Assembly (NCBI GenBank): GCA_047495785.1
Contig: JBLDXI010000023.1
Coordinates: 930,001-994,000, forward strand
Direction of reading: 5' to 3'
From: Lepidodermella squamata
Lineage: Eukaryota > Animalia > Gastrotricha
DNA length: 64,000 bases
Position 1 is the first letter of the stretch. Each line of letters opens with the position of its first letter. The notes below the pieces were generated by a model that saw nothing but the letters and a program-made list of their open reading frames with translations, made no database searches and had not been told where the DNA came from. Position numbers and translations under genes: made by a program. Of this stretch, positions 941 to 39,287 are shown piece after piece.

Positions 941-2071
941 CTAACGAAGAAGCAAAGTGAAAACGACGGCGTAAAACAAAGTTATGCAAGCGAAATGAGT
1001 TAAAAAAGATAGCAAGTCTACAAATATGAATAAACGACCCTCGCGACCGAACCATCGAACTTTCCGCTCCGCTCGTTCGGGCCAAAGAGTTGTAAATCCA
1101 CACATTACAGCTGAATACATTGCTACGATAGCTGAGAAGACAACAACTCCCACCAAGTAAAACTCGGCAACCATTGGCCTTGGGCTAGCTGGGACTGATG
1201 CTCCGAATTGACTCTGCATAACCATGATTGACAGCATTACAGAACACGCGAAAGCTGGCCGGTCCGGTTCAGTCGCTGGAATAGCGAAAGATGCGAAGAC
1301 GAGGCCGTTCAAAATCACACTAGGCGCGAAAAGCGAGATGATAATGAACTGCGGTTTTCGCTTCAAAATGATGGATATTCTCGCCTCCGTGAACCTATCC
1401 GGGCCAATCATGATGCCATCGAGATGCGTTTCATTGCTCACGATTTCCCAGTTTGAATTCGACGGCATACCGTTGCTCTGGAATCTCTGGTAAATTGCTT
1501 CGTTGATATTCATATGCCGTTGAGGCAGCCGGCTTGATATGATCAAAGAGCAGGTTTGAGCGTCGAACGGGAATCGAAGCAGTTCCAGATCACAAGTTGT
1601 CGTAAACCTGCCGTGGTAACTGCCTAAAAAGCGACCCTCAGATGGCCACATAACCATGCTTCTAAACGTTTCTTCAGCCGCGTCAAGAGCCGTTTGCCCA
1701 TACGAGTTTCGCAAAGTCAGTGGCGGGAACCAAATGCTGTCTGTTGGGACTTCATACATTTCTCGGTAGAAATATTCTGGCCAGTGGTTGGAGGCGTTGT
1801 TAACGTAATCCTTGACGCATTTAACTTCCCAAAAGAGATGTATTGCGCCGTTAAACGAAAACGTCTCAGCTACGTCGTTGATGCCGAGGAAGCGGTCCAA
1901 GCCAACAGTGACTGACAGATTTGTTGTTAATTTAGTAATTTCATTCGGTGAATTCGCCGATGCGTGAATGTGGCAGTTTTGCTGCAGAAGCTCCAAGGCT
2001 GGGAAATAGTTTTCGTTCAGGGCGACCACGCCTGCTATGAACCAGCAAAAAAGGATGAATCTTGAAGCCAT
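941..2071 (-). CDS. Divergent Cys-loop LGIC subunit, subfamily C (~376 aa, uninterrupted CDS)
   Basis: ATG at 2071 opens signal peptide MASRFILFCWFIAGVVA; WFPP loop A; Cys-loop CDLELLRFPFDAQTC; pre-M1 LKRKP; four TM segments; M2 starts PDRPAFACSVML. Confidence 0.93.
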   Translation of the reverse strand: MASRFILFCWFIAGVVALNENYFPALELLQQNCHIHASANSPNEITKLTTNLSVTVGLDRFLGINDVAETFSFNGAIHLFWEVKCVKDYVNNASNHWPEYFYREMYEVPTDSIWFPPLTLRNSYGQTALDAAEETFRSMVMWPSEGRFLGSYHGRFTTTCDLELLRFPFDAQTCSLIISSRLPQRHMNINEAIYQRFQSNGMPSNSNWEIVSNETHLDGIMIGPDRFTEARISIILKRKPQFIIISLFAPSVILNGLVFASFAIPATEPDRPAFACSVMLSIMVMQSQFGASVPASPRPMVAEFYLVGVVVFSAIVAMYSAVMCGFTTLWPERAERKVRWFGREGRLFIFVDLLSFLTHFACITLFYAVVFTLLLR

Positions 2072-2265
2072 GTTTGACAACGAATCGGGCGAATGGAAGA
2101 TGTCATTTCCTTGCAAGAAATTTAAAGCAAACACTGCTTGATAGAACAGACTTAATTAATTTTCACATTCTTTTTTTGTTTACTAACCGAGCATTTTCAA
2201 TCGATTTCGATATCATCTTGCACGTACGTGATCATACTCATCATAAAGCGCTCCGGGACTCAGGA

Positions 2266-2336
2266 CTAAGGCGAAGTAGCAGGTTAGGGTTCCGCGTTCT
2301 CACCGCGACGGCCCGGTTTCGATTCCCGGAACTAAA
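2266..2336 (+). pseudogene. tRNA-Glu(CTC)-derived pseudogene or SINE head
   Basis: ggttagggttccgcgttCTCaccgcgacggcccggtttcgattcccgg resembles the eukaryotic tRNA-Glu anticodon arm and T arm/B box; the acceptor stem does not pair. Confidence 0.65.
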
Positions 2337-2581
2337 CTATTTCTAACATGAAGTTTCGGATTCTTTTGTTGTTACGCAGCTTGAAAAAGTAATCTTACTG
2401 AAATAAATGATTCCCACATGTCCATAGGTAAACCGAATTTCGGCTCGCTTGGCGCAGCTCGTGGTTCTAGATCGGGGGAAATTGTATTTCATTATGGAAG
2501 ACACTTGGCAGGTGTTTTTCCCAAGTTTGGTTCTTGAACAGTGTAACAGTGTAAGAAATGTATGTGCTCCATTTTTAATTT

Positions 2582-2883: not shown

Positions 2884-3264
2884 TTGCTCAATTCAAGGAT
2901 GAAATCAGCAATACATTTTACAATACAATAGAATGGTATAATTTCAATACCTTCGAGCTTTCTTGACGGAGCACGTCCAGCTTACCTTGTGCATAGTGCA
3001 AAGTACAGCAAATTATCGTGCACTCGGATGATGCGATGCGGAAATTGAAACATACGTGTTTTGCGCCTCTGACATTTTTCGTAAATGAAAAAACCATTCT
3101 ATCAACCAATAATTCAATACAAAATCGCAGAGGACGAAACTGACGATGAATCTGAGAGGAAATTGCATTCGAAAGCATTGAGATTGACGAACTATAATAA
3201 AAAAATATAAAAATATCTGGCTAACACTTTTCGTCCACTTTCCAATAGTTTATATGTCATCATC

Positions 3265-4446
3265 ATGGCTAGTTCGATACTCCAAGCAATTCTGATCATT
3301 TACATGTCGCAGAATGCCTCGGCGAAACCAGCCGACAATGACAGTATTTGGACGTTCAACCCAACATCAACGATTCTAAGCAACTGTAGGATAGGACCGA
3401 CAGTCAATTCTCCGACTGAATTAGAAGGAGAGCCCACTCTGGTTAAGCTAGCGCTACAGCCAAAACTATTAGCAGAAATTGACGATGTTTCTGAAACTTT
3501 CACTATTTACGCTAGACTCTTCATCATCTATGAATCAAAATGCATTGCCGATTTGTACCGAAACAAATCGCGTAATGGTAGCGTCGAATGGCCGCCCGCC
3601 ATCAGATACTTGTCAAAAGAAGATCCGAGCCAGTACTGGTACCCGAACTTGTCTCATGAAAATTCAATCGCCAGCCCAGAGATGGTCGAAAGTCTATATA
3701 GCAGAGTAGGTATCGACTTTGTTAGAGGCAGCGTTACAATTACCCTGACGGGGAAATTCGCATCAAACTGCAATTTAGACATGACGTACTTCCCTTACGA
3801 TAAGCAGACGTGCAATATTGAAATTGCTATTTTGCAAAGCGACATTTACACGAAAATCAGTGAAGCATGGTTCTTTTCATACAAATATTACGATCCTCCC
3901 TTTCTGAAGGAGAACTCGGGATGGGAGCATGACATTTCGCAACGATCCGCCACATTTGGCATCCTTAGGTTCATGCCTTCAGCTAATTATTCAAGAGCTA
4001 CCTTCAGCTTCGGATTCAAACGGAAACCTGCCTATTTTATGACATATCTTTTCGGGCCCAGTCTGCTTTTAGCAGTATTGATTTTGTCGTCGTTTCTCAT
4101 CCCGGCAGAGGTTTCAGATCGACCGGTTTTCGCATGCACAGTTATGCTGACTATTTTTGTCCTCCAGGAGAATCTGCAAGCTTATTTGCCGAAAACGCCA
4201 AAGCCGATGGTCGCAGGATTCTTCAGCTTGTCACAAGCCATTCTCGCAACGCTGTGTATCATATACGAATCCATGATGTGTGGATTCATCGCTTCATTTC
4301 CCGACATTGCGGGCAGAAAGTTTTCGATTTTTGGCAGAGCAGTTTCTTGCTATTTTGCTGTTGACGCTTTCGTCTTTTCACTCGCATTCATTGCGTATTT
4401 AGCGTCATATGGGCTGATTGTTATCATACTTTTGCATCTGTTATAA
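3265..4446 (+). CDS. Divergent Cys-loop LGIC subunit, subfamily A (393 aa)
   Basis: Signal peptide; WYPNLSHEN; CNLDMTYFPYDKQTC; FKRKP; four TM; M2 SDRPVFACTVML. Confidence 0.93.
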   Translation: MASSILQAILIIYMSQNASAKPADNDSIWTFNPTSTILSNCRIGPTVNSPTELEGEPTLVKLALQPKLLAEIDDVSETFTIYARLFIIYESKCIADLYRNKSRNGSVEWPPAIRYLSKEDPSQYWYPNLSHENSIASPEMVESLYSRVGIDFVRGSVTITLTGKFASNCNLDMTYFPYDKQTCNIEIAILQSDIYTKISEAWFFSYKYYDPPFLKENSGWEHDISQRSATFGILRFMPSANYSRATFSFGFKRKPAYFMTYLFGPSLLLAVLILSSFLIPAEVSDRPVFACTVMLTIFVLQENLQAYLPKTPKPMVAGFFSLSQAILATLCIIYESMMCGFIASFPDIAGRKFSIFGRAVSCYFAVDAFVFSLAFIAYLASYGLIVIILLHLL

Positions 4447-5787: not shown

Positions 5788-6163
5788 TCATAAATCCATT
5801 CGAGAACTGAGACTCTTTGGTGAGCATAGATAAACTCGATCATAATCGAATTTTTTATGGATTCAGAGTTTTTAATAGATATAGATTCGCGTTAGAGTTT
5901 AGCGATTGAATATTTGATTAGTAAAGTCGACAAGCGTATAGGGTCCATAGGTCGCGTGATTTTTATTTTCACACAACAGGGCTAGATCGTGAGTGTCATA
6001 TCTTCAGTATATTTTTATCTATGAAATTTCGCAGTTGTGCTAGCTATGTATTTTGTATGGGCGCTTCGTGATTAATCGAGGAGGAAATTGCATTCGACAA
6101 TCAATATCAGAGAAATTGTCATCTGCAACATTTCTTCCAATAGTTCCCATATCACCAGTGCTC

Positions 6164-11308: not shown

Positions 11309-12457
11309 TCAGTTAAACGCTAGATAGCTCGTTACAATAACATTGAACGCAAGATAAGTTAAGAATAAAATCACAAACGCAACAATATCGATAGCTACAA
11401 AAGCGCGCATCCTCTTGCCGCAGAAATGCACGATCCTGTTCGCTCGATCTTCGTACATGATGCAGTAGCCGCACATAAAAGCCGCGTATGTCGAGCAGAC
11501 CATAGCGAACATGATCACGCCGAGGACGTAGTACGAGGTGATTATGGGCTGGGGCGACTGAGGAACCGCAGCTGAAAACATGCTCTGAAGTACGAAAATC
11601 GACAGCATGACTGAACAGGCGAACGAGGCCCGATCGGGCTCAGTTGCTGGGATTCCAAATGCCGCAATTTCCAGGGTCGATAGGATGAAACTCGGCGCAA
11701 ACATGTTCAGCAAGTAGTACTCCGCCCTTCTCTTCAGTGACATAGTGAAAAAGACCTGGCTCAATGTGCCGAAATTCGCTATTTCAAACTCTTGCATTTC
11801 AGTTCGATTCGAAGCCAAAACCCAGTTCGAGTTCTTCGGCATGATGTTACGACTCAACGAGAACAGATCAGCAGCGGCAACTTTAACAAACTGGGTCGAT
11901 GTTCGCGTGTAGATTATGGCTGTGCAAGTCTGTGTGTCAAAAGGAAACAGGGTCAAGTCAAGATCGCAAGTGTAAGTGAATCTGCCAGCATAAGCCGCAG
12001 AAAATCGACCATCAAACGGATAGATCGTGAGTAGTTCTGAGAATTCATCAGCTTGATCCATTGCAATCTGGCCAACTGCGTTTCTAAGGCCAAGAGGTGG
12101 TATCCAATAAAAATCTGCTGGCTCGTTTTGCAGGATTGCTAACTTTGCTGGCCATTGATTCTTCGGATCTTTCACGTACTCAAACACGCACGGAACTTGC
12201 CAAATCATCTGTAGGACGCCATTGAACGAGAGGGACTCTGCAAGGTCATCTATGCCCAGGAATCTGTCGATTTGAAGGTATAGTAAAATCGGGGTGGGCA
12301 CTCCTTCGAACTCAGTCGGTGAATTAGCTGTTGGGCCGACGTTGCAGTTAGCGTTGAATATATCAGCGGCCTTCAGAGTCGGTGAGTACGTGAGATTATC
12401 AGCCGATGTTCGTTTTGCAAAGCCCAGCCATAAAAAGAGAAAAGCTTCAAGTCTCAT
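11309..12457 (-). CDS. Divergent Cys-loop LGIC subunit, subfamily B (382 aa)
   Basis: ATG 12457 (MRLEAFLFLWL); DNLTY; CDLDLTLFPFDTQTC; LKRRAEYY; M2 PDRASFACSVML. Confidence 0.93.
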   Translation of the reverse strand: MRLEAFLFLWLGFAKRTSADNLTYSPTLKAADIFNANCNVGPTANSPTEFEGVPTPILLYLQIDRFLGIDDLAESLSFNGVLQMIWQVPCVFEYVKDPKNQWPAKLAILQNEPADFYWIPPLGLRNAVGQIAMDQADEFSELLTIYPFDGRFSAAYAGRFTYTCDLDLTLFPFDTQTCTAIIYTRTSTQFVKVAAADLFSLSRNIMPKNSNWVLASNRTEMQEFEIANFGTLSQVFFTMSLKRRAEYYLLNMFAPSFILSTLEIAAFGIPATEPDRASFACSVMLSIFVLQSMFSAAVPQSPQPIITSYYVLGVIMFAMVCSTYAAFMCGYCIMYEDRANRIVHFCGKRMRAFVAIDIVAFVILFLTYLAFNVIVTSYLAFN

Positions 12458-19221: not shown

Positions 19222-19528
19222 GCGAATAAAGATGCACATAAGCCTGTATGTCTCAGAACAGTGCTTCCTGTCACATTGTTTGGTAAACACGTGGCCTCAA
19301 TTTCCTCAAGTAGGCCAGGGTCCTTTTATAATGCATAAGATTTGCACACCTATCAGGCTACGCTGCTCCGAGAACAAACAATGGACGCTTTTTACTTTGA
19401 CGCGTAGGCCAAGAGCCAAAAAATATCAAGATAGTCTGGATTATCATTTTATAGCGAGAACTTTCAGCCCTTAGAAATATGGCAGAAAAATCAGGTAAAA
19501 TTCATATTTTTCAAAATTCTCCATAGCC

Positions 19529-24622: not shown

Positions 24623-25804
24623 CTAGAACAGCTGCAACAGGACGATACTAATCAGCACATATGACGCTAAATACGCAACAAATGTTAGTGAAAAGACTAC
24701 AACGTCAACAGCAAAAGAGAGAGATATTGTCTTATTGAGAATCGAAAGCTTTGTGCCCGCGATTTCTGGGAATGAAGCGATAAATCCGCACATCATGGAT
24801 TCGTATATGACACACAGTGTAGCGAGAACGCTTTGTGATAGGCTAAAGATGCCCGCCGCCATCGGCTTTGGGGTCTTCGGTAAATAATCTTGCAGGTTTT
24901 CTTGCAGAAAGAAAATAGCCAACATAACTGTACAAGCGAATACAGGCCGATCTGGAACCTCGGCAGGGATGAGAAATGACGACAGAATCAACACGCTGAG
25001 AAGCACACTTGGCCCGAAAAGGTATGTCAAGAAATATTCAGGTTTCCGCTTAAATCCGAAGCTGAAAGTAGCCCTTGAAAAATTGGCCCATGGGCCGAAA
25101 CTCAGAACACCAAATGTGGCGGTTCGCTGCGAGATGTCATGCTCCCAGCCGGAGTTTTCCTTCATAAATGGAGTATCGTAATATTCGTATGGAAAGAAGA
25201 AGGCACCGCCGATTTTGGAGTACACGTCACCTTGTAGTAAAGCGAATTCGATATTACACGTCTGCTTATCGAAAGGGAAGTGCGTCAGGTCTAAATTGCA
25301 GTAGGACGCGTATTTCCCCGTCAAGTCAAATGAAACAAGTCCCGTCGTCACGTTTACGAAGGTTTGTCGAAAAAAGCCTTCTACAATCGCTGGGCTGCCG
25401 ACCGAATTTTCATGGGACAAGGTTGGATACCAGTATTGGCTCGGGTCTTCCTTTGACAGGTAATCGATGGCAGGAGGCCATTCGACGCTACCATTATACG
25501 ATACATTACGATAGAGATCGGCAATGCATTTTGATTCATAGTTGATCAAGAGTGAAGCGGAAATAGTGAAAGTTTCAGAAACATCGTCGATTTCTGCTAA
25601 CAGTTTTGGTTGTAGTGCTAGCCAAATTAGAGTAGGCTGCCTTTCTAATTCAGTCGGCGAATTGACTGTCGGTCCTATTCTACAGTTGCTCAGGATCGTT
25701 GCAGTTGGATTGAATGTCCGAATACCGTCGATGTTAGCTAGTATAGCCAAGGCATTTAGCAACATGTAAATGATGTGATATGGTTGGAAAAACGAACTAG
25801 CCAT
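24623..25804 (-). CDS. Divergent Cys-loop LGIC subunit, subfamily A (393 aa)
   Basis: ATG 25804 (MASSFFQ); CNLDLTHFPFDKQTC; M2 PDRPVFACTVMLAIFF. Confidence 0.92.
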   Translation of the reverse strand: MASSFFQPYHIIYMLLNALAILANIDGIRTFNPTATILSNCRIGPTVNSPTELERQPTLIWLALQPKLLAEIDDVSETFTISASLLINYESKCIADLYRNVSYNGSVEWPPAIDYLSKEDPSQYWYPTLSHENSVGSPAIVEGFFRQTFVNVTTGLVSFDLTGKYASYCNLDLTHFPFDKQTCNIEFALLQGDVYSKIGGAFFFPYEYYDTPFMKENSGWEHDISQRTATFGVLSFGPWANFSRATFSFGFKRKPEYFLTYLFGPSVLLSVLILSSFLIPAEVPDRPVFACTVMLAIFFLQENLQDYLPKTPKPMAAGIFSLSQSVLATLCVIYESMMCGFIASFPEIAGTKLSILNKTISLSFAVDVVVFSLTFVAYLASYVLISIVLLQLF

Positions 25805-26378
25805 GATATTGTCATTGCAACTACTGGAAGGAAAGTTGCCTGATAACAATTTAGTTGAGATTTTTATTAGATTTTTTGCAAGCTTGCCAGCGGCAATTTC
25901 CTCTCAGATGTATCATGAATCGTCGATATCGTTTGCATTTATACAATTTTCTGATACATGTTGAGTTATGGGAAATACACTGGCTTATTAATACGTATCA
26001 GCATTGATTTATTGAAAAATCCAGGTTTCGTCTATCCGCTTATCTAGGCTCGTTATAATTTGTTTCAGGCGTGGTTCAACGCTTAAAACTATTCGAAACC
26101 AAACTATTCGATCTGAACCATAGAGCGAAGTACCGATTGGGATGATCAATAAGTCGGCAATGTGACTTCAGTCAAAGACTAAAGGGGGACCCTTACTTCG
26201 ATATTCCTTATCATTACCAGTTCTGCTGTCCTACTTCACTCTCTGAACTGAACAATAGATTCACAAAAGAAATGTGACGAGTTGCAGAAGAAGGTTGAAG
26301 AAGGATTAAACAGTGGCACAGCAAACTAAAGCAAAGAATGGTCAATTGTTTCAACGGTTGAATTGTATGAACAATTTA

Positions 26379-28350: not shown

Positions 28351-28450
28351 TCACTTCATTTTCATCACTTCATCAGGGAACTTCATTACATGATTTTGTA
28401 ACCCAGTACCATTAATTGGACAAAAAGAAATATTCGTTTCTCCCCTGCAG

Positions 28451-29449
28451 GCAGGATATTATGAAATGGTACGCCTCCTTCTCGAAAATGGAGCCGATGT
28501 AGACGCGAAAATTGAACGAGAGACTGAGTTCAGCTTCGCCAGTCAAACAACCGCCTTACACGTGGCGGCTTACTCCGGCCAACTCGACATTGCTCGGCTC
28601 TTAGCTGAGAAATTCCACGCCAACGTGTCAGCAATCGATGCGAATGGCAATTCGGCTATGATGTCCCTCTTCCAAACAGCGATACCTAATCATCTGCTTC
28701 GGTCGTATGTCTCACTGGCAGTTTATCTTCCCGACGAATTGCCGGATAGAAGAGACGTGAAGGGACAATCTGCCCTGCACCTTGCAAGTCAGATCAGCAC
28801 AACTGATCCAATGCCCTTCGTTCGGCACTTGATTGAAAGCCGTAAACTCGACGTAGACGCTAGAGACAACAACGGAGACACTCCTCTTCTGATTGCAGCC
28901 AGGGCTGGTAGTTCGCTCAGCCTGGTTCGTTACCTTGTCGAGAAGAGAGCTGATACTAAGGCCGTGAATAACGCCGGAGAAAATTTGCTACTAAGCGCGT
29001 GCAAAGCCGGAAGCAAACGCCGAGGTCTCGATTTTATCAAATTCGCCATTGAAGTCGGTGGCAATAACGTAAATTCCGTGGCTGATGGTAAGCGTTGTGA
29101 CCACCTGATCGTCAACTCAAATCCCCTGTATATGACCAATCAAAATGATGGATATCGGATCCGAGCTGTGAGATACCTAGTTAGTAAGGGGTTCGATCTT
29201 AACCCTCGCGGCGTAGATTCCCCGCTGATGGTCGCAGCCAGGATGGATTCGTTACGATATTTGAACGCCCTGCTTGACATGGGGGCGGATGTGAACGTGA
29301 CCAATCCCGCGGGAAAGACGGCGCTGGATTTCGCACGGGAGAAAAACTATCGAGGCAACGTTGCAAGTCTACTGCGTCTTAAAGCTGTTTCAGGCCAAAA
29401 TTTGACAGGAGTTTCTACTATTACTACACCTGGACGAACTACTACCTGA
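28451..29449 (+). CDS. Ankyrin-repeat protein type A, 5'-incomplete (possible pseudogene)
   Basis: Exon begins after acceptor cctgcag|28451; ANK motifs (TALHVAA, SALHLA, TPLLIAA, TALDFA); paralog of 59536-61056; no upstream exon found; reading frame continues past TGA 29447. Confidence 0.8.
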   Translation, partial: AGYYEMVRLLLENGADVDAKIERETEFSFASQTTALHVAAYSGQLDIARLLAEKFHANVSAIDANGNSAMMSLFQTAIPNHLLRSYVSLAVYLPDELPDRRDVKGQSALHLASQISTTDPMPFVRHLIESRKLDVDARDNNGDTPLLIAARAGSSLSLVRYLVEKRADTKAVNNAGENLLLSACKAGSKRRGLDFIKFAIEVGGNNVNSVADGKRCDHLIVNSNPLYMTNQNDGYRIRAVRYLVSKGFDLNPRGVDSPLMVAARMDSLRYLNALLDMGADVNVTNPAGKTALDFAREKNYRGNVASLLRLKAVSGQNLTGVSTITTPGRTTT

Positions 29450-29703: not shown

Positions 29704-30930
29704 AAATTTGTCCGGCTCGTGATCGATGGCAATATTTCAGCCGTGCGCGAGATGATAGCCACGAAACAAGCCCGAGGCGATGCTATCCTAATCACAGATG
29801 AATACGACCATATCCCGGCCGTAGCAGCTGCTTTGAAAGCTGGAGACACTACCTTGGAAATGGTGGAGCTACTGCTCGAAAACGGTGGTGATGCGAATGC
29901 TGTTCATCCTGATAATAGTAGAAGCGCCCTAATGATGGCTGCGTCCAGCGGAAGCCTAGAAATGGTCCAACTTCTCTTGAAGTACGGCGCAGAGATTGAC
30001 CTGGAGATCGCGCGTGATAGAACAAGAACAGCACTCACAGAAGCTGCGGCTTTTAACAAGATAGACATTGTCAAGTTTCTCAGGACAAAAGGAGCCAACA
30101 AGTATTCAGATAAATTGATTGTTGCCTACAACCAACTAAATGGTGTTCCTGTACTCCCGTTGATTAAGTATGCCGTCGAAGAAGCTCAAAATTCTGTGAA
30201 TGAGACAGATTCCCATGGCTCAACTGCTTTCATCAGCGCAGCGACAGATTTGTCGTATTCCGACGACCGCCTCGGGGTTCTCGCGTACTTGCTCGCAAAA
30301 GGAGCTGATCCTGATGGTTTTGTTTATTCGCACGGCAATAAAGAGCCATTACTGCATTACGCTGTCAGCGAAAACGATATAGATTTAATCCGATTCTTGG
30401 TCGAAGTCGCGAAGGTCAACGTGGAAGTGCGGAATGACGATAATTTGACGGCTTTGATGATTGCGGCGAAGAACGGCGACGAACAGATTGCAGAAATTCT
30501 GTTCGGCGCAAAAGCAGATCGAACGGCACTTGATAGCGATGGCAACACGCCTTACCTTTTGCATTGCGCTAGTAGTAAAGCCCCTGGATCGCTTACTCAG
30601 CGCTTTGTCGGATTCGGCGATTTCGACGTAAATTCGCAGAATTACAATAACGAAACCTGCTTGGCGCTACTTCATACCCGGCGGAACCCGACGTACACGT
30701 TCAATTTAGTGAACTTTCTCGTTCGTTCAGGCTACGATATCAATAGGAAATTGCGGCGAGGTGACACTGCGCTTAATATGTACATTATGAACGGCGGGTA
30801 TTCAACGATTCGAGATTTCCGAGAAGCAGGTGCTGATTTAAGGCAGTCGAATGATGATAGCCTCACTGCTCTGGATATAGCCAAGCTATACGGCAACGAT
30901 CAAGCTGTTCAGGAATTGGAAAACCACTGA
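29704..30930 (+). CDS. Ankyrin-repeat protein type B (main exon)
   Basis: Acceptor ctatcag|29704 KFVRLVIDGN; many ANK repeats; shares ARGDA and GYDINRKLRRGDT with 56014-57438. Confidence 0.82.
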   Translation, partial: KFVRLVIDGNISAVREMIATKQARGDAILITDEYDHIPAVAAALKAGDTTLEMVELLLENGGDANAVHPDNSRSALMMAASSGSLEMVQLLLKYGAEIDLEIARDRTRTALTEAAAFNKIDIVKFLRTKGANKYSDKLIVAYNQLNGVPVLPLIKYAVEEAQNSVNETDSHGSTAFISAATDLSYSDDRLGVLAYLLAKGADPDGFVYSHGNKEPLLHYAVSENDIDLIRFLVEVAKVNVEVRNDDNLTALMIAAKNGDEQIAEILFGAKADRTALDSDGNTPYLLHCASSKAPGSLTQRFVGFGDFDVNSQNYNNETCLALLHTRRNPTYTFNLVNFLVRSGYDINRKLRRGDTALNMYIMNGGYSTIRDFREAGADLRQSNDDSLTALDIAKLYGNDQAVQELENH

Positions 30931-32043: not shown

Positions 32044-33192
32044 ATGAGAGTGGGAATCCATTTATTCGCATTGCTCTACTTTGTTAATTGCGGTGCAGCT
32101 GATAATCTCACATACTCACCTACTATTAAGGCCGCCGATATTTTCAACGCTAACTGCAACATCGGCCCAACGGCTAATTCGCCAACTGAGTTCGAAGGAG
32201 TTCCTACTCCAATCTCACTAATTCTTCAAATCGACAGATTTCTCGGCATAAACGACATCGAAGAATCCCTCTCATTCAACGGGGTCCTTCAGATTATTTG
32301 GGAGGTCCCGTGCGTGATGGAGTACGTGAACAACACGGATAGTCAATGGCCAGCTAAGTTGAAAATGCTGCAAAATGAACCACCGGATTCCTACTGGATA
32401 CCGCCTGTCGGCCTTAGAAACGCTGTGGGTCAGATGGCGATGGATAAAGCAGATGAATTCTCAGAACTGCTCACGATCTATCCGTTTGAAGGTCGATTTA
32501 ACGGGGCTTATGCTGGCAGATTCACGTACACCTGCGACCTCGACCTAACCCTGTTTCCATTTGACACCCAAACTTGTACGGCCGTAATCAACATGCGAAT
32601 ATCGACTCTATTCGTTAAGGTTGCCGTTGCGAATATGATCGCATTGAGTCCTAATATTATGCCGAAAAACTCGAATTGGATTCTGGTTTCAAACGAAACT
32701 GAAATACAGGAGTTTGAGCTTGCGAACTTCGGTAGTCTGAGTCAGGCCTTATTCACTATGACGTTGAAGAGACGAGCCGAGTACTACATGCTGAACATGT
32801 TCGCACCTAGCTTCATTCTATCGACCCTAGAAATCGCTGCTTTTGGAATACCAGCCACTGAGCCAGATCGGGCTTCATTTGCCTGCTCAGTCATGCTGTC
32901 GATTTTCGTGCTTCAGGGACTTTTCTCAGCTGCAGTTCCTCAATCACCCCGGCCTATAGTCACTTCATTCTACGTTCTTGGAGTTATTATGTTTGCTATG
33001 GGCTGCTCAACTTACGCAGCAATCATGTGCGGTTGGTGCATGATGCATGAAGATCGAGCTCGAAGAACTGTACATATCTGCGGCAAAAAGATGCGCGCTT
33101 TCGTTGCTATTGACATTGCAGCGTTTGCTATCTTCTTGTTGACTTACATTTCGTTCAACGTTATCACGGTTTTTTGCCTTGCTTTTATATAG
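32044..33192 (+). CDS. Divergent Cys-loop LGIC subunit, subfamily B (382 aa)
   Basis: ATG 32044 (MRVGIHLFALL); CDLDLTLFPFDTQTC; M2 PDRASFACSVML. Confidence 0.93.
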   Translation: MRVGIHLFALLYFVNCGAADNLTYSPTIKAADIFNANCNIGPTANSPTEFEGVPTPISLILQIDRFLGINDIEESLSFNGVLQIIWEVPCVMEYVNNTDSQWPAKLKMLQNEPPDSYWIPPVGLRNAVGQMAMDKADEFSELLTIYPFEGRFNGAYAGRFTYTCDLDLTLFPFDTQTCTAVINMRISTLFVKVAVANMIALSPNIMPKNSNWILVSNETEIQEFELANFGSLSQALFTMTLKRRAEYYMLNMFAPSFILSTLEIAAFGIPATEPDRASFACSVMLSIFVLQGLFSAAVPQSPRPIVTSFYVLGVIMFAMGCSTYAAIMCGWCMMHEDRARRTVHICGKKMRAFVAIDIAAFAIFLLTYISFNVITVFCLAFI

Positions 33193-33670
33193 CTCAGCAT
33201 GGCAGCACTAAAATCAGGCTAAGATTTATTCTACAGGGAAAATTGAGAAAGAATTCTGAATAATTATTACAACAGGCTTGTCTTGGTGTATCATGATTAT
33301 ATATGTTTTGAAGCATGAATAAACAGCAACGAACAGCATTACGAACGTTGAATTTCACGTTTCAGCCTGCAGGATTCGATTAACGAGAACATTGCTATAG
33401 GTATTTCGCCGTGCTGCTCTCCGACGTGCAATGAACGTAGAAAACAGAGCAATAAACTTTACCAGCTCGGTTGCGTCGGTCTGATCATTTCGAAAGTCTG
33501 TTTACACAGAACAATGTTCCGATCCTCTGTCAAATATCAATGTTTTGTGGAAAGTTTTTGCCGATGAATGTTTTACTGACGAAAATCTCAATATCCGGTA
33601 GAAAATCTTGTCATATCGTGATATGAGGCATAAGCTTTAGTTTTAGCATTTCTGCTACTCAAAACTGGCT

Positions 33671-34819
33671 ATGAAATTGAAGCTGTTTTTCTACTTGTGG
33701 CTATGCTCGTTTAATCAAGTGGAAGCAGGCAACCTCACTTATTCGGCCACTTTAAAAGCAGCAGACATTCTCAACGCTCAATGCAACATTGGCCCTACAG
33801 CCAACTCGCCAACGGAACACGAAGGATACCCTACTCTTATTTTCCTTTTCCTTCAAATTGACAGATTCTACGGCATAAATGACGTTGGAGAATCGATATC
33901 GTTCAATGGCATTCTTCAACTTGTTTGGTTCGTACCCTGTGTCAGTCAATACGCGAATGACCCAGCGAACCAATGGCCAGCTACCTACAAGGTGCTCCAG
34001 AACGAGCCATCGACTTCGTATTGGATTCCACCTGTAGGCCTTCGGAATTCAGTCGGTCAAATGATGCTGGACAGAGCTGATGAATTTGCAGAAATAGTCT
34101 CCATCTATCCGTTTGAGGGTCGATTTGTTGGTGGCTATGTCGGGCGATTCAGTTATACCTGCGACCTAGACCTAACCCTATTCCCATTTGATACCCAGAC
34201 CTGCACAGCGGTGATTAATCAGCGAGTGATTACTGATTTTGTAAAAATGGCGAGCGCGAGTTTCATCACAGTACAGTCGGAGATAATTCCGGAAAACTCG
34301 AACTGGATTTTGCTGTCAAATCGAACTGAAATACGAGAGTTTGAAGTTGTTAATTTCGGTAAGTTGAACCAAGCAACTTTCACGATGGTTTTGAAACGCA
34401 GGGCCGAGTACTACATGCTGAACATGTTCGCGCCTAGTTTTATTCTATCGACGCTGGAAATGGCAGCATTTGGAATCCCAGCAACTGAGCCTGATCGAGC
34501 ATCATTTGCCTGCTCAGTCATGCTGTCGATTTTCGTGCTTCAGGGCATGTTTTCAGCCGCCGTTCCTCAATCGCCGAAGCCCATAGTCACATCCTACTAC
34601 GTCCTCGGCGTGATCATGTTCGCTATGGTCTGCTCCACATACGCGGCTATCATGTGCGGCTACTGCATCATGTACGAAGATCGAGCGAACAGGATCGTGC
34701 ATTTCTGTGGCAAAAAGATGCGCGCTTTCGTCGCTATCGACATTGTTGCGTTTATGGTTTTATTTCTAATTTACATTGCATTCAATTTCATTGTAACGAG
34801 CTACCTTGCGTTCAAATGA
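33671..34819 (+). CDS. Divergent Cys-loop LGIC subunit, subfamily B (382 aa)
   Basis: Signal peptide, Cys-loop, four TM, PDRASF. Confidence 0.93.
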   Translation: MKLKLFFYLWLCSFNQVEAGNLTYSATLKAADILNAQCNIGPTANSPTEHEGYPTLIFLFLQIDRFYGINDVGESISFNGILQLVWFVPCVSQYANDPANQWPATYKVLQNEPSTSYWIPPVGLRNSVGQMMLDRADEFAEIVSIYPFEGRFVGGYVGRFSYTCDLDLTLFPFDTQTCTAVINQRVITDFVKMASASFITVQSEIIPENSNWILLSNRTEIREFEVVNFGKLNQATFTMVLKRRAEYYMLNMFAPSFILSTLEMAAFGIPATEPDRASFACSVMLSIFVLQGMFSAAVPQSPKPIVTSYYVLGVIMFAMVCSTYAAIMCGYCIMYEDRANRIVHFCGKKMRAFVAIDIVAFMVLFLIYIAFNFIVTSYLAFK

Positions 34820-36215
34820 ATCTCGCTTGAATATACAGCTTGAACTTGAATATACACATGAGCTGATAAGATCATTTAACTATCGCTCGGCTGAGTGTGC
34901 TAAAAGCCAAATTATGCTGATTACTGCTGTATATATGGTAAAATCAAAACTTGTTTTGTTTCAAACGAATAAAATAGTTCGTGACATTTTGACAAATCTG
35001 ATTAAAAAATGGGCCCTTACCATCAACGGCCGACGTGGGCTGAAATTCGCCTTAGTCATTTTCAGGTGTAATGATCTTGCGCTGAGCGCAGTTGCTGATA
35101 CTGTAAGCTCCACAACTGCCAAGGCTAGAGCTTTCAAATTTACCGACTTCAACGTCACGTCAACACAAACTTTCAAATTTACCACGCTGTACGAATCGGT
35201 AAAAGGTAATTTCGTACCCGCAAATTCATTTTCATTCCAATTGACAAAAAATGCAAAGATAACTATTCGAATTTCGTGACATTTCGTGACATTGAAATGG
35301 GCATCTAATAATTCCGCGCTTTAAATAAGTCGCGTGTGTGTCTGAAATTCCGTATGGGTGGGGTACCACCCTCGGGGACTGTTGTCGGTTGATCAACGCG
35401 TTTTAAGTGTTTCGTTACTTGTAATCACTGTGACTACCCTGATCGTCGTTTATCAGCCGTTTCTGGTGCTTTGGAGAGCTTGGGCTGCTCTCTAGCATGC
35501 TCAGAAGTCATGAAATTCGTAAAAATGCCCCATTTTAGGACCCTAAATTGACCCATATTGAAGCTACTAGTCACGTCCAAGGGGGTCATGAAGTGGTGGA
35601 AATAGTTTTAAACCTCACTTACTAATTTAAGAACACGATTCGGAAACAACTAATGACATCCGCCTGAAAATATGGTTGAAAATTGCGATTTACGCAAATT
35701 ACGACAGGTGTGCGTTTCTTTATGGCCATGTAGTGTAGTATCAGTATCAGTATGAGAATGAAAATTTTGACTTCGTGTGAATGTCGATGAAATATTGTCT
35801 AAAACATGAACATACAGCCATGAACGGCTTTAAGATCGGGGATTGATTGTGTGGCGGAATCTTTTTATTTTTTTATCATGTTAGATTTGATAAACGTGAA
35901 AATTGTTACGCATTTTACCGTGATGCTCTCCGGAGCGCGATGAACGTAGCAAACAGGGTGAGCAATGCACTTTACCGGCCTAGTTGCGCCAGTCTGCAAA
36001 CTTTGAAAGTTTGTTTACGCAAAACAGTGTTCCGATCCTTGTCAAACACCACACGGCAAAATCAAGATAAGCTCGTGATATTGTTTGAAATATTCTCTGA
36101 TGAATGATCTGCGTTCTACGGACGAATATCTCAATATCCGGTACATAAATCTTGGATTGTCGCGCTATGAGGCATGAGGCATTTGTTATTTTTTCGTCCA
36201 AAACTGAAGCTGACT

Positions 36216-37364
36216 ATGAAATTGAAGCTGTTTTTGTACCTGTTGTTGTGCTCGTTCAACCAAATGGCCGCAGAAAATCTCACGTATGCAGCGACTTTGA
36301 AAGCAGCGGATCTTCTTAACGCAAGGTGCAACATTGGCCCTACAGCGAACTCACCAACAGAATACGAGGGAACCCCTACTCCGATAATACTTTTCCTTCA
36401 AATCGACAGATTTCTCGGCATAAATGACGTTGAAGAATCCCTGTCATTCAACGGCCTTCTTCAAATGGTTTGGTTTGTTCCTTGCGTCAGTCAGTACGTG
36501 AACGACCCAGCAAACCAATGGCCTCCTATGCTGACAATGCTCCAAAATGAGCAAGCGACATCGTATTGGATGCCACCTATTGGCCTTAGAAATGCAGTCG
36601 GCCAAATGATAATGGAGCTAGCAAGCGAATTTGCGGAAGTAATATCCATATATCCTTATGAAGCTCGATTTGTTGGTGGCTATGCCGGTCGATTCACTTA
36701 CACCTGCGATCTCGACCTAACATTGTTTCCATTTGATACCCAGACTTGCACTGCTTTAATTTATCAACGAGTGGTTACCAAATTCTTCATAATGGCGGAC
36801 GCTAAATTCATTACAATAACGTCTGAGATAATTCCGCAAAACTCGAACTGGATATTGCTGTCCAATCGAACAGAAATACAAGAATTTGATGTGGTTAATT
36901 TCGGCAGGGTGAACCAAGCAGCTTTCACGATGGTTCTGAAACGAAGGGCTGAGTTCTACATGCTGAATATGTTCGCACCTAGCTTCATTTTATCGACGCT
37001 GGAAATCGCCGCCTTTGGAATCCCGGCGACTGAGCCTGATCGAGCTGCATTCGCATGTTCAGTCATGCTGTCGATTTTCGTGCTTCAGGGTATGTTCTCA
37101 GCCGCTGTCCCTCAGTCGCCCCGGCCCATAATCACCTCGTACTACGTCCTCGGAGTTATTATGTTCGCTATGATTTGCTCGACATACGCAGCTATCATGT
37201 GCGGCTACTGCATCATGTACGAAGACCGAGCGAGCAGGATCGTGCGTTTTTGTGGCAAGAAGATGCGCGCCTTCGTCGCTATCGACATCGTCGCATTTCT
37301 CATTTTCTTTTTGACCTACATTTCGTTCAATGTTATTTTAACGGGCTACCTCGCGTTCAATTAA
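36216..37364 (+). CDS. Divergent Cys-loop LGIC subunit, subfamily B (382 aa)
   Basis: ATG 36216 (MKLKLFL); Cys-loop; PDRAAF; upstream ~300 bp homologous to that of 33671. Confidence 0.93.
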   Translation: MKLKLFLYLLLCSFNQMAAENLTYAATLKAADLLNARCNIGPTANSPTEYEGTPTPIILFLQIDRFLGINDVEESLSFNGLLQMVWFVPCVSQYVNDPANQWPPMLTMLQNEQATSYWMPPIGLRNAVGQMIMELASEFAEVISIYPYEARFVGGYAGRFTYTCDLDLTLFPFDTQTCTALIYQRVVTKFFIMADAKFITITSEIIPQNSNWILLSNRTEIQEFDVVNFGRVNQAAFTMVLKRRAEFYMLNMFAPSFILSTLEIAAFGIPATEPDRAAFACSVMLSIFVLQGMFSAAVPQSPRPIITSYYVLGVIMFAMICSTYAAIMCGYCIMYEDRASRIVRFCGKKMRAFVAIDIVAFLIFFLTYISFNVILTGYLAFN

Positions 37365-38122
37365 ATTCCGCTCCTTTGTTGAACTAACGCATATGAGGTG
37401 AGAGGATCATCTCCCTATCGTTCGAGACCTAACATGCGCTGAATATTGCCTTATGTAAACTGTTTCATACCCTGAAATTATACCAGCAGTCAACTACTTT
37501 TAGCAAGTGTATTGTAATCGTTTTCAAAATAGCTTGTGGTGAATGAATAAAATACACTCTTAGTCTTAGCGTAGTTACTGATTAGGTGAGCTCTAATTTT
37601 TATTTTCGATTTTGGCAGTAAATCAGAAGTTTCACAAATCAATCATTCTTCAAATTTAGCACGCTTTACGAATCTGGACCTGAGATCTGAGATTTATGAA
37701 CGTTTTCGCCCATCAGACAATGCTGACTCTAAGGGGTATATTCGGACCCTAATTTTCAGCTAACAGAGGTTGGGACCCCTGAGTTACTATCGGGCTTTCT
37801 TGACTGTACATTAGGAACTGGGGGCGCAATTATTGAATGTCACAGTTTGATCTAGAATCTAGATGAACAATATCCTTTGCCGACTTATTAAAACACTTCC
37901 CATTAATTGCTGCTAGTAATCAGCGAACCATATCGATTGAAACTACGCAGCAGAATATCATACGAACGAGGGCTCCTAATAACACGAATGACAATTGGGT
38001 TGACTCGTGAGGCAGCATAAATAGCAAGAGGTGGGCAAACATCCGCCAATAATTGATCATAAAGTTAAGCTTTAAGTCTTCCACTTATTCGTTGTTGGCA
38101 TTTTAAATAAACCGATTATGAA

Positions 38123-39287
38123 ATGATTATTATACTCACCGTTTCCATCTTCGCAGTCACGAGTGCGGAAACTGATCTTGACCTTATTCTGTCGCAATGT
38201 CACGTGTCGCCTGAAGCAAACTCGCCCAGCGAGCTCACAGGTCAACCTACTTTAATTCGAACTTCTTTGATGGTCGACCGAATAATGGAACTGGACGACG
38301 TGAGTGAGACAATGAAGATAGGCGGAGTTTTCATAGTCAACTGGTTCGACAGGTGCACAGCTACTCTGCAAGGCAACACAACCACATCCGTGATTCAGTT
38401 GTTCGACGATAGCCTCGGTAAAATATGGAGGCCGCGATTTTTCCATCGCAATGGCATAACTAACACTGCGTTGAAGGGCGATGACATTGGCAAGGCCCTG
38501 GCTATCGAGATACCGATGGGTGTCTACTACGAGCAAACGGTTGGCCTTTTCGATTCGTATTGTTACTTCGACTTTTTTCGATATCCTTTTGAAAGGTACT
38601 TAGGCTTTACTGAAACTTATCTATCGCATTATCTAAAAAATTGATTTTTTTCTAAGGCAATTCTGTTGCGCGAAATTTGTGCTGATGAATCGGCATCAAT
38701 TCGCTTATATTGAATTCGCAACCGTAAATTTCCTATCGAACGACATCATCTCCAACGGCTCTGTCTGGCGATATCTTTCGAGCAGCGCTTCAGTCGATCG
38801 CAGTAATTCATCTGGAAATTATAACGACTACAACGTCGCTGAATTTTGCTTCTATTTCCAACGCAACCCAGACTACTACCTTATCAACCTATTCGCGCCA
38901 GGTTTCATACTAAGCCTTTTGGAGGAATCGAGTTTCCTCGTGCCAGCCGAGTTCCCGGACCGAGCTGCACTAGCGTGTACCTTCATGCTGTCAACCTTCG
39001 TCCTGCAAGCCCAAATGCTGTCGAGCCTACCGAAAACTTCGCAAGCTATCGTTGCAGAGTATTACCTGCTTGGTCAAACGATTTTTGCCATGTTGATCGC
39101 GATATATTCCTCAGCGATATGTACGTTTGTGACTCTGTGGCCGGACAAAGCTCGCAGTGATCTGGTCGTGTTCAAGAAAAGCTTCAGATATTACATTTTC
39201 GTTGACTTGGTAGCTTGCTCGGTTTTTGCCACTGTGTTCACCTGTTTCAATCTGGCGACGGCTTGGGTCTTTATAGTTAGCGCTTGA
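38123..39287 (+). CDS. Divergent Cys-loop LGIC subunit, subfamily D, two exons (~367 aa)
   Basis: Exons 38123-38595 and 38657-39287; removing the 61-nt GT-AG intron restores Cys-loop CYFDFFRYPFERQFC; M2 PDRAALACTFML. Confidence 0.88.

What the first reader, a model, noticed from the sequence alone, without database searches (positions are those of the whole stretch)
941..39287. Tandem array of 14 minimal, orphan Cys-loop channels: candidate new ionotropic chemoreceptor family
Seen: 14 intact pLGIC ORFs (367-393 aa) and 2 pseudogenes in 38 kb, in four subfamilies (A x4, B x6, C x3, D x1). Ectodomain loops vary strongly between paralogs, TM domains are conserved, and there is no loop-C Cys-Cys. 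Known: neurotransmitter pLGICs are usually intron-rich and conserved. Clustered, intron-poor AChR-like genes lacking the ACh site are the pattern of cephalopod chemotactile receptors and of chemoreceptor birth-and-death evolution generally. Inference: an independent recruitment of Cys-loop channels as sensory receptors, possibly combinatorial heteropentamers.
Basis: partly seen in the sequence, partly recalled or inferred. Interest (0 to 1): 0.92.

Follow-up and report, generated by a model that had tools for sequence, protein, structure and literature searches.

The report
Array of minimal orphan Cys-loop channels
Fourteen neighbouring, intact genes encode unusually small nicotinic-receptor-type ion channel subunits that lack the acetylcholine site and the usual cytoplasmic domain. 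They belong to a distinct, uncharacterised branch of a well-known channel superfamily, and a smell/taste role is possible but untested.

Summary
Window 941-39287 carries 14 intact pentameric ligand-gated channel genes of 367-396 aa. Thirteen are single-exon. One has a 61-nt intron that is seen spliced in an RNA run. There are also two A-type pseudogenes and a small B-type relic. The genes fall into four subfamilies: A x4, B x6, C x3, D x1.

All 14 keep the Cys-loop, the gating interface and the 9' Leu. All lack the five aromatic-box residues and the loop-C Cys-Cys. The M3-M4 link is about 20 residues, and all carry an extra invariant Cys pair.

About 68 full-length relatives share these hallmarks at only 20-37% identity. 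Every relative sampled is an unnamed metagenome contig, often also in tandem arrays. Bivalve and fish hits are canonical channels with a cytoplasmic domain and fall outside the clade.

The paralogs are old (dS 0.5 to above 2) and under purifying selection. Binding loops B, C, E and F are the most variable ectodomain parts, but no ectodomain stretch exceeds pN/pS 0.7.

So this is a real, expressed, deep local radiation of a distinct minimal Cys-loop clade. The chemoreceptor reading is plausible but untested. Intronless tandem nAChR-like arrays are already published for molluscs. The scan found similar arrays elsewhere in this genome (s1-368330, s1-373989).

The parts
941..2071 (-). C1, intact single-exon pLGIC gene, 376 aa
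   Evidence: ORF and PF02931 E 5e-14; Cys-loop at aa 160-174
3265..4446 (+). A1, intact single-exon pLGIC gene, 393 aa
6164..7336 (+). A2, intact single-exon pLGIC gene, 390 aa
9369..10502 (-). C2, intact single-exon pLGIC gene, 377 aa
   Evidence: also a weak PF02932 hit
11309..12457 (-). B1, intact single-exon pLGIC gene, 382 aa
13468..14622 (-). B2, intact single-exon pLGIC gene, 384 aa
15541..16686 (-). B3, intact single-exon pLGIC gene, 381 aa
16898..18034 (-). C3, intact single-exon pLGIC gene, 378 aa
20316..21497 (-). A3, intact single-exon pLGIC gene, 393 aa
21652..21735 (+). B-type N-terminal relic (aa 15-42)
   Evidence: tblastn E 1e-5, 54% identity
22803..23016 (-). psiA2: A-type fragment (M1-M2 piece and M4 piece only)
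   Evidence: tblastn E 1e-11 and 1e-5
24623..25804 (-). A4, intact single-exon pLGIC gene, 393 aa
26382..28352 (-). psiA: A-type pseudogene. The C-terminal half (26382-26921, aa 214-393) is intact. A Cys-loop piece (28233-28352) carries an in-frame stop. The two are separated by 1.3 kb of unrelated DNA, and the N-terminal 160 aa are missing.
   Evidence: tblastn E 1e-82 and 1e-11
32044..33192 (+). B4, intact single-exon pLGIC gene, 382 aa
33671..34819 (+). B5, intact single-exon pLGIC gene, 382 aa. Covered by exact-match contigs of RNA run X1. Modelled with AlphaFold2.
   Evidence: depth 2-26 over 33697-35075, none over 35076-37045; pLDDT 94.3
36213..37364 (+). B6, intact single-exon pLGIC gene, 383 aa from the Met that aligns with B5 (396 aa from the upstream Met at 36174)
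38123..39287 (+). D1, intact two-exon pLGIC gene, 367 aa (exons 38123-38595 and 38657-39287)
   Evidence: spliced junction seen in RNA run X1
38596..38656 (+). 61-nt GT..AG intron of D1, inside the Cys-loop codons
   Evidence: sequence; contig loose ends at 38596 and 38654 in X1 (table 7)

Best explanation
**What it is.** The region is a deep, locally grown radiation of functional subunit genes for small pentameric ligand-gated ion channels. They belong to a distinct, uncharacterised clade of eukaryotic Cys-loop receptors.

**Architecture of each product.**
- A signal peptide.
- A roughly 225-residue beta-sandwich ectodomain with the canonical Cys-loop.
- A second, clade-specific Cys pair near the N-terminal helix. 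I infer it is a disulfide.
- Four membrane helices.
- Only a roughly 20-residue hairpin in place of the usual cytoplasmic domain.

**How it most likely works (inferred).** Five subunits should form a channel that opens when an extracellular ligand binds at subunit interfaces.
- The gate (9' Leu) and the ectodomain-membrane coupling residues are invariant.
- The -1' Asp/Glu next to the 0' Arg predicts cation selectivity.

**Ligand.** It is not acetylcholine, serotonin or another amine bound by a cation-pi box. All five box positions are replaced: Arg or Glu at loop A; Arg, Leu or Met at loop B; aliphatic or small residues at loop D; and no loop-C Tyr or Cys-Cys. The two pocket arginines in subfamilies B and C hint at an acidic or polar ligand.

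**Paralogs.** They differ most in loops B, C, E and F, so they probably differ in ligand or partner specificity.

**Shown here:** gene integrity, clade hallmarks, fold, purifying selection, transcription and splicing of D1, and probable transcription of B5.

**Inferred:** pentamer formation, gating, cation selectivity and ligand class.

**Physiological role.** It is open: external chemosensation, or sensing of internal metabolites, ions or pH. My odds are about 0.3 for a chemosensory role and about 0.4 for an endogenous non-classical ligand. The remainder is spread over the other readings.
For: **Membership of the superfamily**
- Pfam PF02931 is above threshold in all 14.
- All have C-x13-C with an FPFD-type core (FPFD in most).
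- The AlphaFold2 model of B5 has pLDDT 94.3 and pTM 0.84. It shows an N-terminal helix, a beta-sandwich, four helices and an M3-M4 hairpin at 342-351.
- Foldseek TM is 0.74/0.83 to human muscle nAChR. GABA-A beta3 and alpha7 are equally good matches.

**Gating machinery**
- P172, C178, R243, R276, L285 and P299 are invariant across 79 family sequences.

**Clade hallmarks**
- The C38/C90 pair is present in 14/14 window genes and in 67/68 and 66/68 relatives. It is absent in 9 canonical-length outgroups.
- There are 26 residues between the M3 Gly and the M4 Asp, against 48-160 in the outgroups.
- -1' is Asp or Glu in 14/14 and 61/68. 0' is Arg and 9' is Leu in all.

**Selection**
- omega is 0.03-0.21 in M1-M3 and 0.07-0.39 in the ECD.

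**Expression**
- A spliced D1 junction is present in RNA run X1.
- Exact-match contigs cover B5, with zero depth on the neighbouring intergenic DNA.

**Phylogeny**
- The 14 window genes are monophyletic against all retrieved relatives, with support 91/88.
- The wider minimal clade is separated from canonical-length channels at 99 SH-aLRT.

**Binding-site equivalences**
- These come from the HMMER alignment to alpha7 and from fixed offsets: W+7 in loop A, and second Cys-loop Cys +7 in loop B.
Against: - No ligand, current, assembly or cell-type data exist.
- Binding-loop equivalences rest on sequence alignment at about 20% identity and on a model whose coordinates I could not inspect.
- The -2' Pro is typical of anion channels, so selectivity is not certain.
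- RNA support comes from one small run kept as contigs. For the intronless B5, DNA carry-over cannot be strictly excluded.
- Support for monophyly of the 14 is moderate. Paralogs elsewhere in the genome were not available to me.
Confidence: 0.72

Rival explanations
1. The array is an ionotropic chemoreceptor repertoire. Subunits are expressed in sensory, epidermal or gut cells and detect external chemicals, in convergence with cephalopod chemotactile receptors.
For: - Tandem, intron-poor array with pseudogenes.
- Loss of the whole aromatic box.
- Greatest ectodomain variation in binding loops B, C, E and F.
- No cytoplasmic domain for synaptic anchoring.
- Metagenome relatives carry the same channel module behind lectin-like or EGF heads.
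- Several more such arrays are noted in the same genome (unverified notes).
- Chemoreceptor families are typically intronless and tandem (PMC11526382).
Against: - No expression site is known.
- Duplicates are old and constrained: dS is 0.5 to above 2, ECD omega is at most 0.39, and no ectodomain window exceeds pN/pS 0.7. Octopus receptors, by contrast, show diversifying selection in the pocket (PMC11526382).
- Only two pseudogenes and a relic accompany 14 intact genes.
- Orphan expansions of nAChR-like genes in molluscs are linked to development, stress and immunity as well (PMC6896357).
Confidence: 0.3
2. The genes encode receptors for an endogenous but non-classical signal, such as protons, a metal ion, an acidic metabolite or a peptide. 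They would act in neurons or non-neuronal tissues and would be diversified for kinetics or cell type rather than for many ligands.
For: - Strong purifying selection and old paralogs.
- A conserved Arg at both the loop A and loop B positions across all B and C genes, as in carboxylate-binding pLGICs. That comparison is from my own knowledge of GluCl, GABA-A and GlyR.
- pH-gated and Zn-gated Cys-loop channels are known (PMC13065796 for a pH-sensitive mite channel).
- Subfamily-specific conserved promoter motifs fit stable, distinct expression programmes.
Against: - The pocket residues differ widely between subfamilies A, B/C and D, and across the wider clade. The loop A position is R21, L11, T6, M5 and F4 among the 68 relatives. 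That argues for many ligands rather than one.
Confidence: 0.4
3. The genes are decaying or non-functional copies, or an assembly artefact such as collapsed or duplicated haplotypes.
For: Intronless tandem copies can be retro-pseudogenes, and some intron-poor mollusc copies are silent (PMC6896357).
Against: - There are 14 open frames of 367-396 aa with omega far below 1 and invariant gating residues.
- Copies differ by at least 15% in protein sequence, so they are not haplotigs.
- DNA run X2 covers the stretch laid (33500-39400: B5, B6, D1) at even depth, apart from cross-mapping peaks on conserved parts.
- D1 is spliced in RNA.
Confidence: 0.03

Closest known systems
Expanded intronless, tandem nAChR-like genes of molluscs and annelids (Jiao et al. 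2019, PMC6896357)
   Same: Cys-loop subunits of the cationic type, largely intronless or with 1-2 introns, in tandem arrays of up to 12 genes. They are highly divergent and have unknown ligands.
   Different: The bivalve proteins that my profile found (Mactra, Tegillarca, Argopecten) keep a cytoplasmic domain, because the profile match breaks after M3 and resumes 60-100 residues later. Canonical-length proteins of this kind (a Bulinus nAChR-like protein and 8 others in the tree) lack the extra Cys pair and fall outside the minimal clade. The bivalve proteins themselves were not placed in a tree. The window genes have a roughly 20-residue M3-M4 link.
Cephalopod chemotactile receptors (van Giesen 2020; Allard/Kang 2023, as reviewed in PMC11526382)
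   Same: nAChR-like pentameric channels that have lost ACh binding. They are intronless and expanded in tandem.
   Different: Those are a recent offshoot of molluscan nAChRs, with a hydrophobic pocket under diversifying selection and shown expression in sucker sensory cells. Here the clade is deep and ICD-less, has a polar, Arg-bearing pocket in B and C, shows no ectodomain window with pN/pS above 0.7, and has an unknown expression site. No chemotactile receptor is among the best 60 sequence matches or the best 50 fold matches in the PDB.
Alpo4, orphan Cys-loop receptor of Alvinella pompejana (PMC10338036; PDB 8bx5 group)
   Same: An invertebrate nAChR/5-HT3-like orphan without the loop-C Cys-Cys. 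It is unresponsive to classical transmitters.
   Different: Alpo4 keeps the aromatic box (F103, W159, Y199, Y205, W65) and an intracellular domain (residues 308-412) according to the paper. The window family has neither. The profile E-value to 8bx5 is 5e-19, weaker than to nAChR delta.
Prokaryotic pLGICs (GLIC, ELIC, DeCLIC)
   Same: A minimal architecture with a very short M3-M4 link and no cytoplasmic domain.
   Different: The window proteins have the eukaryotic Cys-loop disulfide motif and an N-terminal helix. By sequence they sit nearest to cation-selective animal receptors.

Membership tests
Pentameric ligand-gated ion channel (Cys-loop / Pro-loop) superfamily | Neur_chan_LBD ectodomain above Pfam gathering score | tested here: met
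   PF02931 scores 27-53 bits against a cut-off of 26 in all 14 genes (D1 by its first exon)
Pentameric ligand-gated ion channel (Cys-loop / Pro-loop) superfamily | Cys-loop C-x13-C with central F/Y-P-x-D | tested here: met
   Present in 14/14; D1 only after removal of the 61-nt intron
Pentameric ligand-gated ion channel (Cys-loop / Pro-loop) superfamily | Beta-sandwich plus four-helix membrane domain; M2 with 9' Leu; pre-M1 Arg and M2-M3 Pro coupling residues | tested here: met
   AF2 model pLDDT 94.3; Foldseek TM 0.74/0.83 to nAChR; L285, R243 and P299 invariant in 79 sequences
Pentameric ligand-gated ion channel (Cys-loop / Pro-loop) superfamily | Pentameric assembly and ligand-gated conductance | not testable with these tools
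   Needs expression and electrophysiology or cryo-EM
Nicotinic acetylcholine receptors (ACh-gated) | Aromatic box: loop A Tyr, loop B Trp, loop C two Tyr, loop D Trp | tested here: not met
   Loop A position is R (10) or E (4). Loop B position is R (B, C), L (A) or M (D). Loop D position is aliphatic or small. There are no loop C tyrosines.
Nicotinic acetylcholine receptors (ACh-gated) | Vicinal Cys-Cys in loop C (alpha-type subunits) | tested here: not met
   No CC in A, B or C. The only CC in D1 abuts the Cys-loop.
Nicotinic acetylcholine receptors (ACh-gated) | Long M3-M4 intracellular domain | tested here: not met
   26 residues between the M3 Gly and the M4 Asp, against 48-160 in canonical-length outgroups; hairpin at 342-351 in the model
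Nicotinic acetylcholine receptors (ACh-gated) | Nested inside the nAChR clade in a phylogeny with reference sets | tested here: inconclusive
   The profile is about equally near nAChR delta (4e-25), alpha7 and 5-HT3A (about 2e-22). The minimal clade is separate from a mollusc nAChR-like outgroup. Full named reference sets could not be fetched.
Cephalopod chemotactile receptors | Descent from molluscan nAChRs (clade membership) | tested here: inconclusive
   None appears among the best PDB sequence or fold matches. The family hallmarks (extra Cys pair, no ICD) are absent from canonical mollusc proteins. No tree with chemotactile receptor sequences could be built.
Cephalopod chemotactile receptors | Expression in sensory cells and gating by poorly soluble external compounds | not testable with these tools
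   Only one small RNA run of unknown tissue was available
Cephalopod chemotactile receptors | Diversifying selection on binding-pocket sites | tested here: inconclusive
   Sliding 30-codon pN/pS is at most 0.68 in the mature ectodomain for the four closest pairs. Site models on more sequences were not run, and dS is saturated for most pairs.
Prokaryotic-type minimal pLGICs (GLIC/ELIC) | No Cys-loop disulfide and no N-terminal helix | tested here: not met
   Both Cys-loop cysteines are present; helix at 30-37 in the model

The most novel reading that the evidence does not exclude
The array is one locus of a large, previously unrecognised clade of ICD-less eukaryotic Cys-loop receptors. The clade's hallmarks are an extra N-terminal disulfide, no aromatic box and a roughly 20-residue M3-M4 hairpin. 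On this reading, one animal lineage uses the clade as its main ionotropic sensor chassis for external or surface cues. The module occurs stand-alone, as here, or behind lectin, EGF or SRCR heads, as in metagenome relatives and as noted elsewhere in this genome. That would be a second, independent conversion of Cys-loop channels into sensory receptors, far older than the cephalopod one.
Probability: 0.25. Interest if true: 0.8.

Novelty: new variant of a known kind. Interest (0 to 1): 0.55.

Why it matters
**If the clade is what it seems**
- It gives the smallest natural eukaryotic Cys-loop channels: about 360 mature residues, no disordered cytoplasmic domain, and a very confident predicted fold.
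- That makes them attractive for structure determination and for asking what the cytoplasmic domain is needed for.
- It adds a well-defined orphan group to the problem of deorphanising expanded invertebrate channels.
- The Arg-bearing pocket suggests ligands outside the classical amine set.
- If expression turns out to be sensory, it would be a second case of neurotransmitter-receptor-to-chemoreceptor transition in this superfamily.

**Limits**
- Tandem, intron-poor, orphan nAChR-like expansions are already a known pattern.
- The function here is untested.

Tried and rejected
- **Word-indexed protein search.** With B5 it found nothing. With a 79-sequence family alignment it found only 5 hits. 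The index does not reach 30% relatives, so these blanks carry no weight.
- **Exact look-up of B5.** It is not on record, so this genome's proteins are not in the collections.
- **Identifying the organism.**
  - Rfam and tRNA scans of the window were empty.
  - AFDB organism names were masked.
  - ESM Atlas taxa were uninformative.
  - A 2DBD nuclear-receptor paper gave no taxon with such expansions.
  - Another agent's note says 'most likely a rotifer'. I could not confirm it, and none of 25 sampled family clusters came from an annotated rotifer proteome.
- **ML tree with named reference sets.** A full tree with nAChR, 5-HT3, ZAC, GABA/Gly, chemotactile receptor and nematode LGC sets was not possible, because PDB and UniProt sequences cannot be fetched. 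I used profile E-values to the PDB and outgroups from the representative search instead.
- **Alpo receptors as ICD-less relatives.** I recalled this from memory and rejected it. The paper gives Alpo4 an ICD of about 105 residues and an intact aromatic box.
- **Microsynteny with metagenome contig L001.** There is only a 51-aa, 37% match near an ANF-receptor-like ORF, which is too weak to use.
- **Homology outside the coding regions.** I found none. Repeats stop at the coding regions, so duplication units cannot be delimited.
- **Literature.** Searches for an ICD-less eukaryotic Cys-loop family found nothing specific.

Full report
**1. What is in the sequence**

ORF listing with the standard code and Pfam scans show 13 uninterrupted ORFs of 376-396 codons between 941 and 37364. 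All hit the neurotransmitter-gated channel ectodomain family PF02931 above its gathering score.

A 14th gene (D1) is split into two ORFs, 38123-38644 and 38637-39287. The DNA between them reads as a 61-nt GT..AG intron, 38596-38656. Removing it gives one 367-aa frame and restores a C-x13-C Cys-loop.

Contigs of the RNA run X1 end at 38596 and 38654, with loose letters that continue exactly in the other exon (table 7). So this splice is real and D1 is transcribed.

X1 also has exact-match contigs on B5, with depth 2-26 over 33697-35075. Depth is zero over the intergenic DNA and most of B6 (35076-37045). That argues for RNA rather than DNA carry-over, although B5 has no intron to prove it.

A tblastn of the family against the window adds three remnants:
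- an A-type pseudogene in two pieces: 26382-26921, and 28233-28352 with a stop inside the Cys-loop;
- an A-type fragment at 22803-23016;
- a 28-aa B-type relic at 21652-21735.

Nothing channel-like lies in 1-940 or 39288-64000. Two ankyrin-repeat genes (28466-29449, 29752-30930) interrupt the array.

**2. Subfamilies and age**

Pairwise identity and two trees give A x4, B x6, C x3 and D x1.

| Comparison | Protein identity |
|---|---|
| Within A | 67-85% |
| Within B | 60-81% |
| Within C | 46-50% |
| B against C | 35-42% |
| All other pairs of subfamilies | 26-32% |

Nei-Gojobori estimates show mostly saturated synonymous divergence (dS 0.5 to above 2). Purifying selection acts everywhere:
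- omega is 0.03-0.11 in M1-M3 for A and B, and up to 0.21 in C;
- omega is 0.07-0.39 in the ectodomain.

DNA similarity between copies stops at the coding regions. These are old duplicates, not a recent burst.

Two pairs show much lower dS in the 3' part than in the ectodomain. B1-B5 has 0.51 against 2.0. The A3-A4 3' end has 0.05 against 0.51. This looks like gene conversion and contributes to the apparent conservation of the membrane domain.

**3. Anatomy of the proteins**

All 14 have a hydrophobic N-terminus and the Cys-loop with an FPFD-type core (FPFD in most). All have four predicted membrane helices.

The AlphaFold2 model of B5, built with 79 family sequences, has pLDDT 94.3 and pTM 0.84. 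It shows:
- an N-terminal helix (30-37);
- the beta-sandwich;
- M1 246-268, M2 274-297, M3 306-334 and M4 352-381;
- a short hairpin (342-351) between M3 and M4.

Foldseek finds muscle nAChR, GABA-A beta3 and alpha7 subunits at TM 0.65-0.75 (by the model) and 0.63-0.83 (by the match).

In the HMMER alignment to alpha7 the pore reads -2' Pro, -1' Asp, 0' Arg and 9' Leu.

The binding-site equivalents are all non-aromatic:

| Position | Residues in the array |
|---|---|
| Loop A Tyr93 | Arg in B, C, D; Glu in A |
| Loop B Trp149 | Arg in B and C; Leu in A; Met in D |
| Loop D Trp55 | Aliphatic or small |
| Loop C | Neither the two Tyr nor the Cys-Cys |

Identity by segment shows where paralogs differ most.

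| Segment (within subfamily B) | Identity |
|---|---|
| Loop B | 43% |
| Loop C | 54% |
| Loop F | 55% |
| Loop E | 63% |
| M3-M4 link | 53% |
| M4 (lipid-facing) | 56% |
| M1, M1-M2 and M2 | 90-95% |

Sliding 30-codon pN/pS for the four closest pairs never exceeds 0.68 in the mature ectodomain. Constraint on the loops is relaxed, but positive selection is not shown at this resolution.

**4. Relatives**

A profile of 13 window proteins was searched with HMMER against 1.84 billion cluster representatives. It found 9,927 proteins at E up to 1e-3 and 127 at E up to 1e-30.

The best relatives are only 30-37% identical to any window protein. This genome's own proteins are therefore not in the library, and there are no close orthologues.

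About 68 full-length hits of 340-420 aa share the hallmarks of the window genes:
- the extra Cys pair (C38/C90 in B5 numbering) in 67/68 and 66/68, but in none of 9 canonical-length outgroups;
- a median of 26 residues between the M3 Gly and the M4 Asp, against 48-160;
- an acidic -1' in 61/68;
- 0' Arg and 9' Leu in all.

In a 91-row tree this minimal clade is set off at SH-aLRT 99. In a careful 47-row tree the 14 window genes are one clade, (D, A, (C, B)), with support 91/88.

I sampled 25 family clusters: 20 stand-alone and 5 with N-terminal extensions. All come from unnamed ENA or Logan metagenome assemblies. On their contigs they again sit in tandem runs of up to four single-ORF genes (L001, L002).

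The named high scorers are bivalve proteins (Mactra, Tegillarca, Argopecten) and fish 5-HT3A-like proteins. They score well because they contain several fused channel copies. In each copy the profile match stops after M3 and resumes 60-100 residues later. They are canonical, ICD-bearing channels and not members of the clade.

Some metagenome members carry 110-560 extra N-terminal residues with weak ConA-lectin or EGF hits.

Against the PDB the family profile is about equally near nAChR delta (4e-25), alpha7 (1.7e-22) and 5-HT3A (2.2e-22). It is weaker to the Alpo4 entries (5e-19). Anion-selective receptors are not among the best 60. By sequence, then, the family sides with the cation-selective branch without belonging to a named group.

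**5. Interpretation**

What is shown:
- a real, expressed, selectively maintained array of channel-subunit genes;
- membership of a distinct minimal clade of Cys-loop receptors;
- intact gating machinery;
- a binding pocket that cannot work like that of acetylcholine or serotonin receptors.

What is inferred:
- pentameric assembly;
- cation selectivity, from the -1' Asp, with the -2' Pro as a caveat;
- a polar or acidic ligand for B and C, from the two pocket arginines;
- differing specificity among paralogs, from loop variation.

The chemoreceptor proposal fits the genomic pattern. It also fits the lack of a cytoplasmic anchoring domain and the existence of domain-headed relatives. But it has no direct support. 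The strong constraint and the age of the paralogs resemble a stable receptor family more than a fast-turnover repertoire.

I give about 0.3 to an external chemosensory role and about 0.4 to endogenous non-classical ligands such as pH, ions or metabolites. The remainder is spread over the other readings.

**6. Comparison with what is known**

- **Mollusc expansions.** Intronless, tandem, orphan nAChR-like expansions with arrays of up to 12 genes are published for molluscs and annelids (PMC6896357).
- **Alpo4.** It is a studied orphan that keeps the aromatic box and an ICD (PMC10338036).
- **Cephalopod chemotactile receptors.** They are nAChR-derived, intronless, and under diversifying selection in the pocket (PMC11526382).
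- **Earlier survey.** The survey behind the 'Pro-loop' name did not describe an ICD-less Cys-loop clade (PMC4795631).
- **My own searches.** Two further literature searches found none either.

The kind of finding is therefore known. The particular clade and its minimal architecture appear undescribed, so I class it as a new variant of a known kind.

**7. Context from the scan (unverified notes)**

The same genome has other arrays of 'minimal' or 'stripped-down' Cys-loop channels (s1-373989; s1-368330, 15 genes). For s1-368330 another agent reached much the same verdict. Several channels with lectin, EGF/CUB/Sushi or SRCR heads are also noted. One agent guessed that the genome is a rotifer's, which I could not confirm.

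Noticed in passing
window 3157-3185, 6082-6100, 21584-21600, 25890-25905 (A genes); 12535-12550, 33585-33600, 36128-36143 (B genes): Subfamily-specific upstream motifs survive although the rest of the intergenic DNA has diverged. All four A genes have GAGGAAATTGC (extended ...ATT in A1-A3) about 80-110 nt before the ATG, and TT(T/C)C(T/C)TTCCA(A/G)TAG about 30 nt before it. B1, B5 and B6 have AATATCCGGT about 80 nt before the ATG, and B3 has CACCGGAAG. The GGAA/CCGGA cores look like ETS-type sites. These are candidate promoter elements. Coordinates are approximate.
   Followed up: partly
window 11309-11845 vs 34283-34825; 20316-20600 vs 24623-24900: Signs of gene conversion between paralogs. 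For B1-B5, membrane-domain dS is 0.51 against 2.0 in the ectodomain. For A3-A4, the 3' end has dS 0.05 against 0.51.
   Followed up: partly
window 28466-29449 and 29752-30930 (+); also 56014-57390 and 59536-60906 (-): There are single-ORF ankyrin-repeat genes, two of them inside the channel array. I did not examine this.
   Followed up: no
window 39998-41324, 42047-43759, 49126-50864 (+): There are three tandem pepsin-like aspartyl protease genes, each split by a short intron. By language-model features the first exon is nearest to fungal, oomycete and plant aspartyl protease clusters rather than animal ones. This is a lead for foreign origin or strong divergence.
   Followed up: partly
window 45292-48159 (+); L001 1932-4570: ANF-receptor-like ORFs lie a few kb from the channel array, both in the window and in metagenome contig L001. 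The only detectable similarity is 37% over 51 aa.
   Followed up: partly
L002 478-1983 (-): A single-ORF nuclear receptor (zf-C4 plus ligand-binding domain, 501 aa) lies next to a four-gene minimal-channel array in a metagenome contig of 38% GC. The source organism shares the intron-poor, array-rich genome style of the window.
   Followed up: no
proteins P0045, P0054, P0072, P0089, P0041 (metagenome relatives): The complete minimal channel module, matched through M4 without a gap, is preceded by 110-560 extra N-terminal residues. These have weak ConA-like lectin (P0089) or EGF (P0072) hits. This parallels unverified notes of lectin-, EGF/CUB- and SRCR-headed channels in this genome.
   Followed up: partly
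I saw only short ORFs at 19205-19474 and 19529-19774, the latter with a hydrophobic stretch. I did not pursue it.
   Followed up: no
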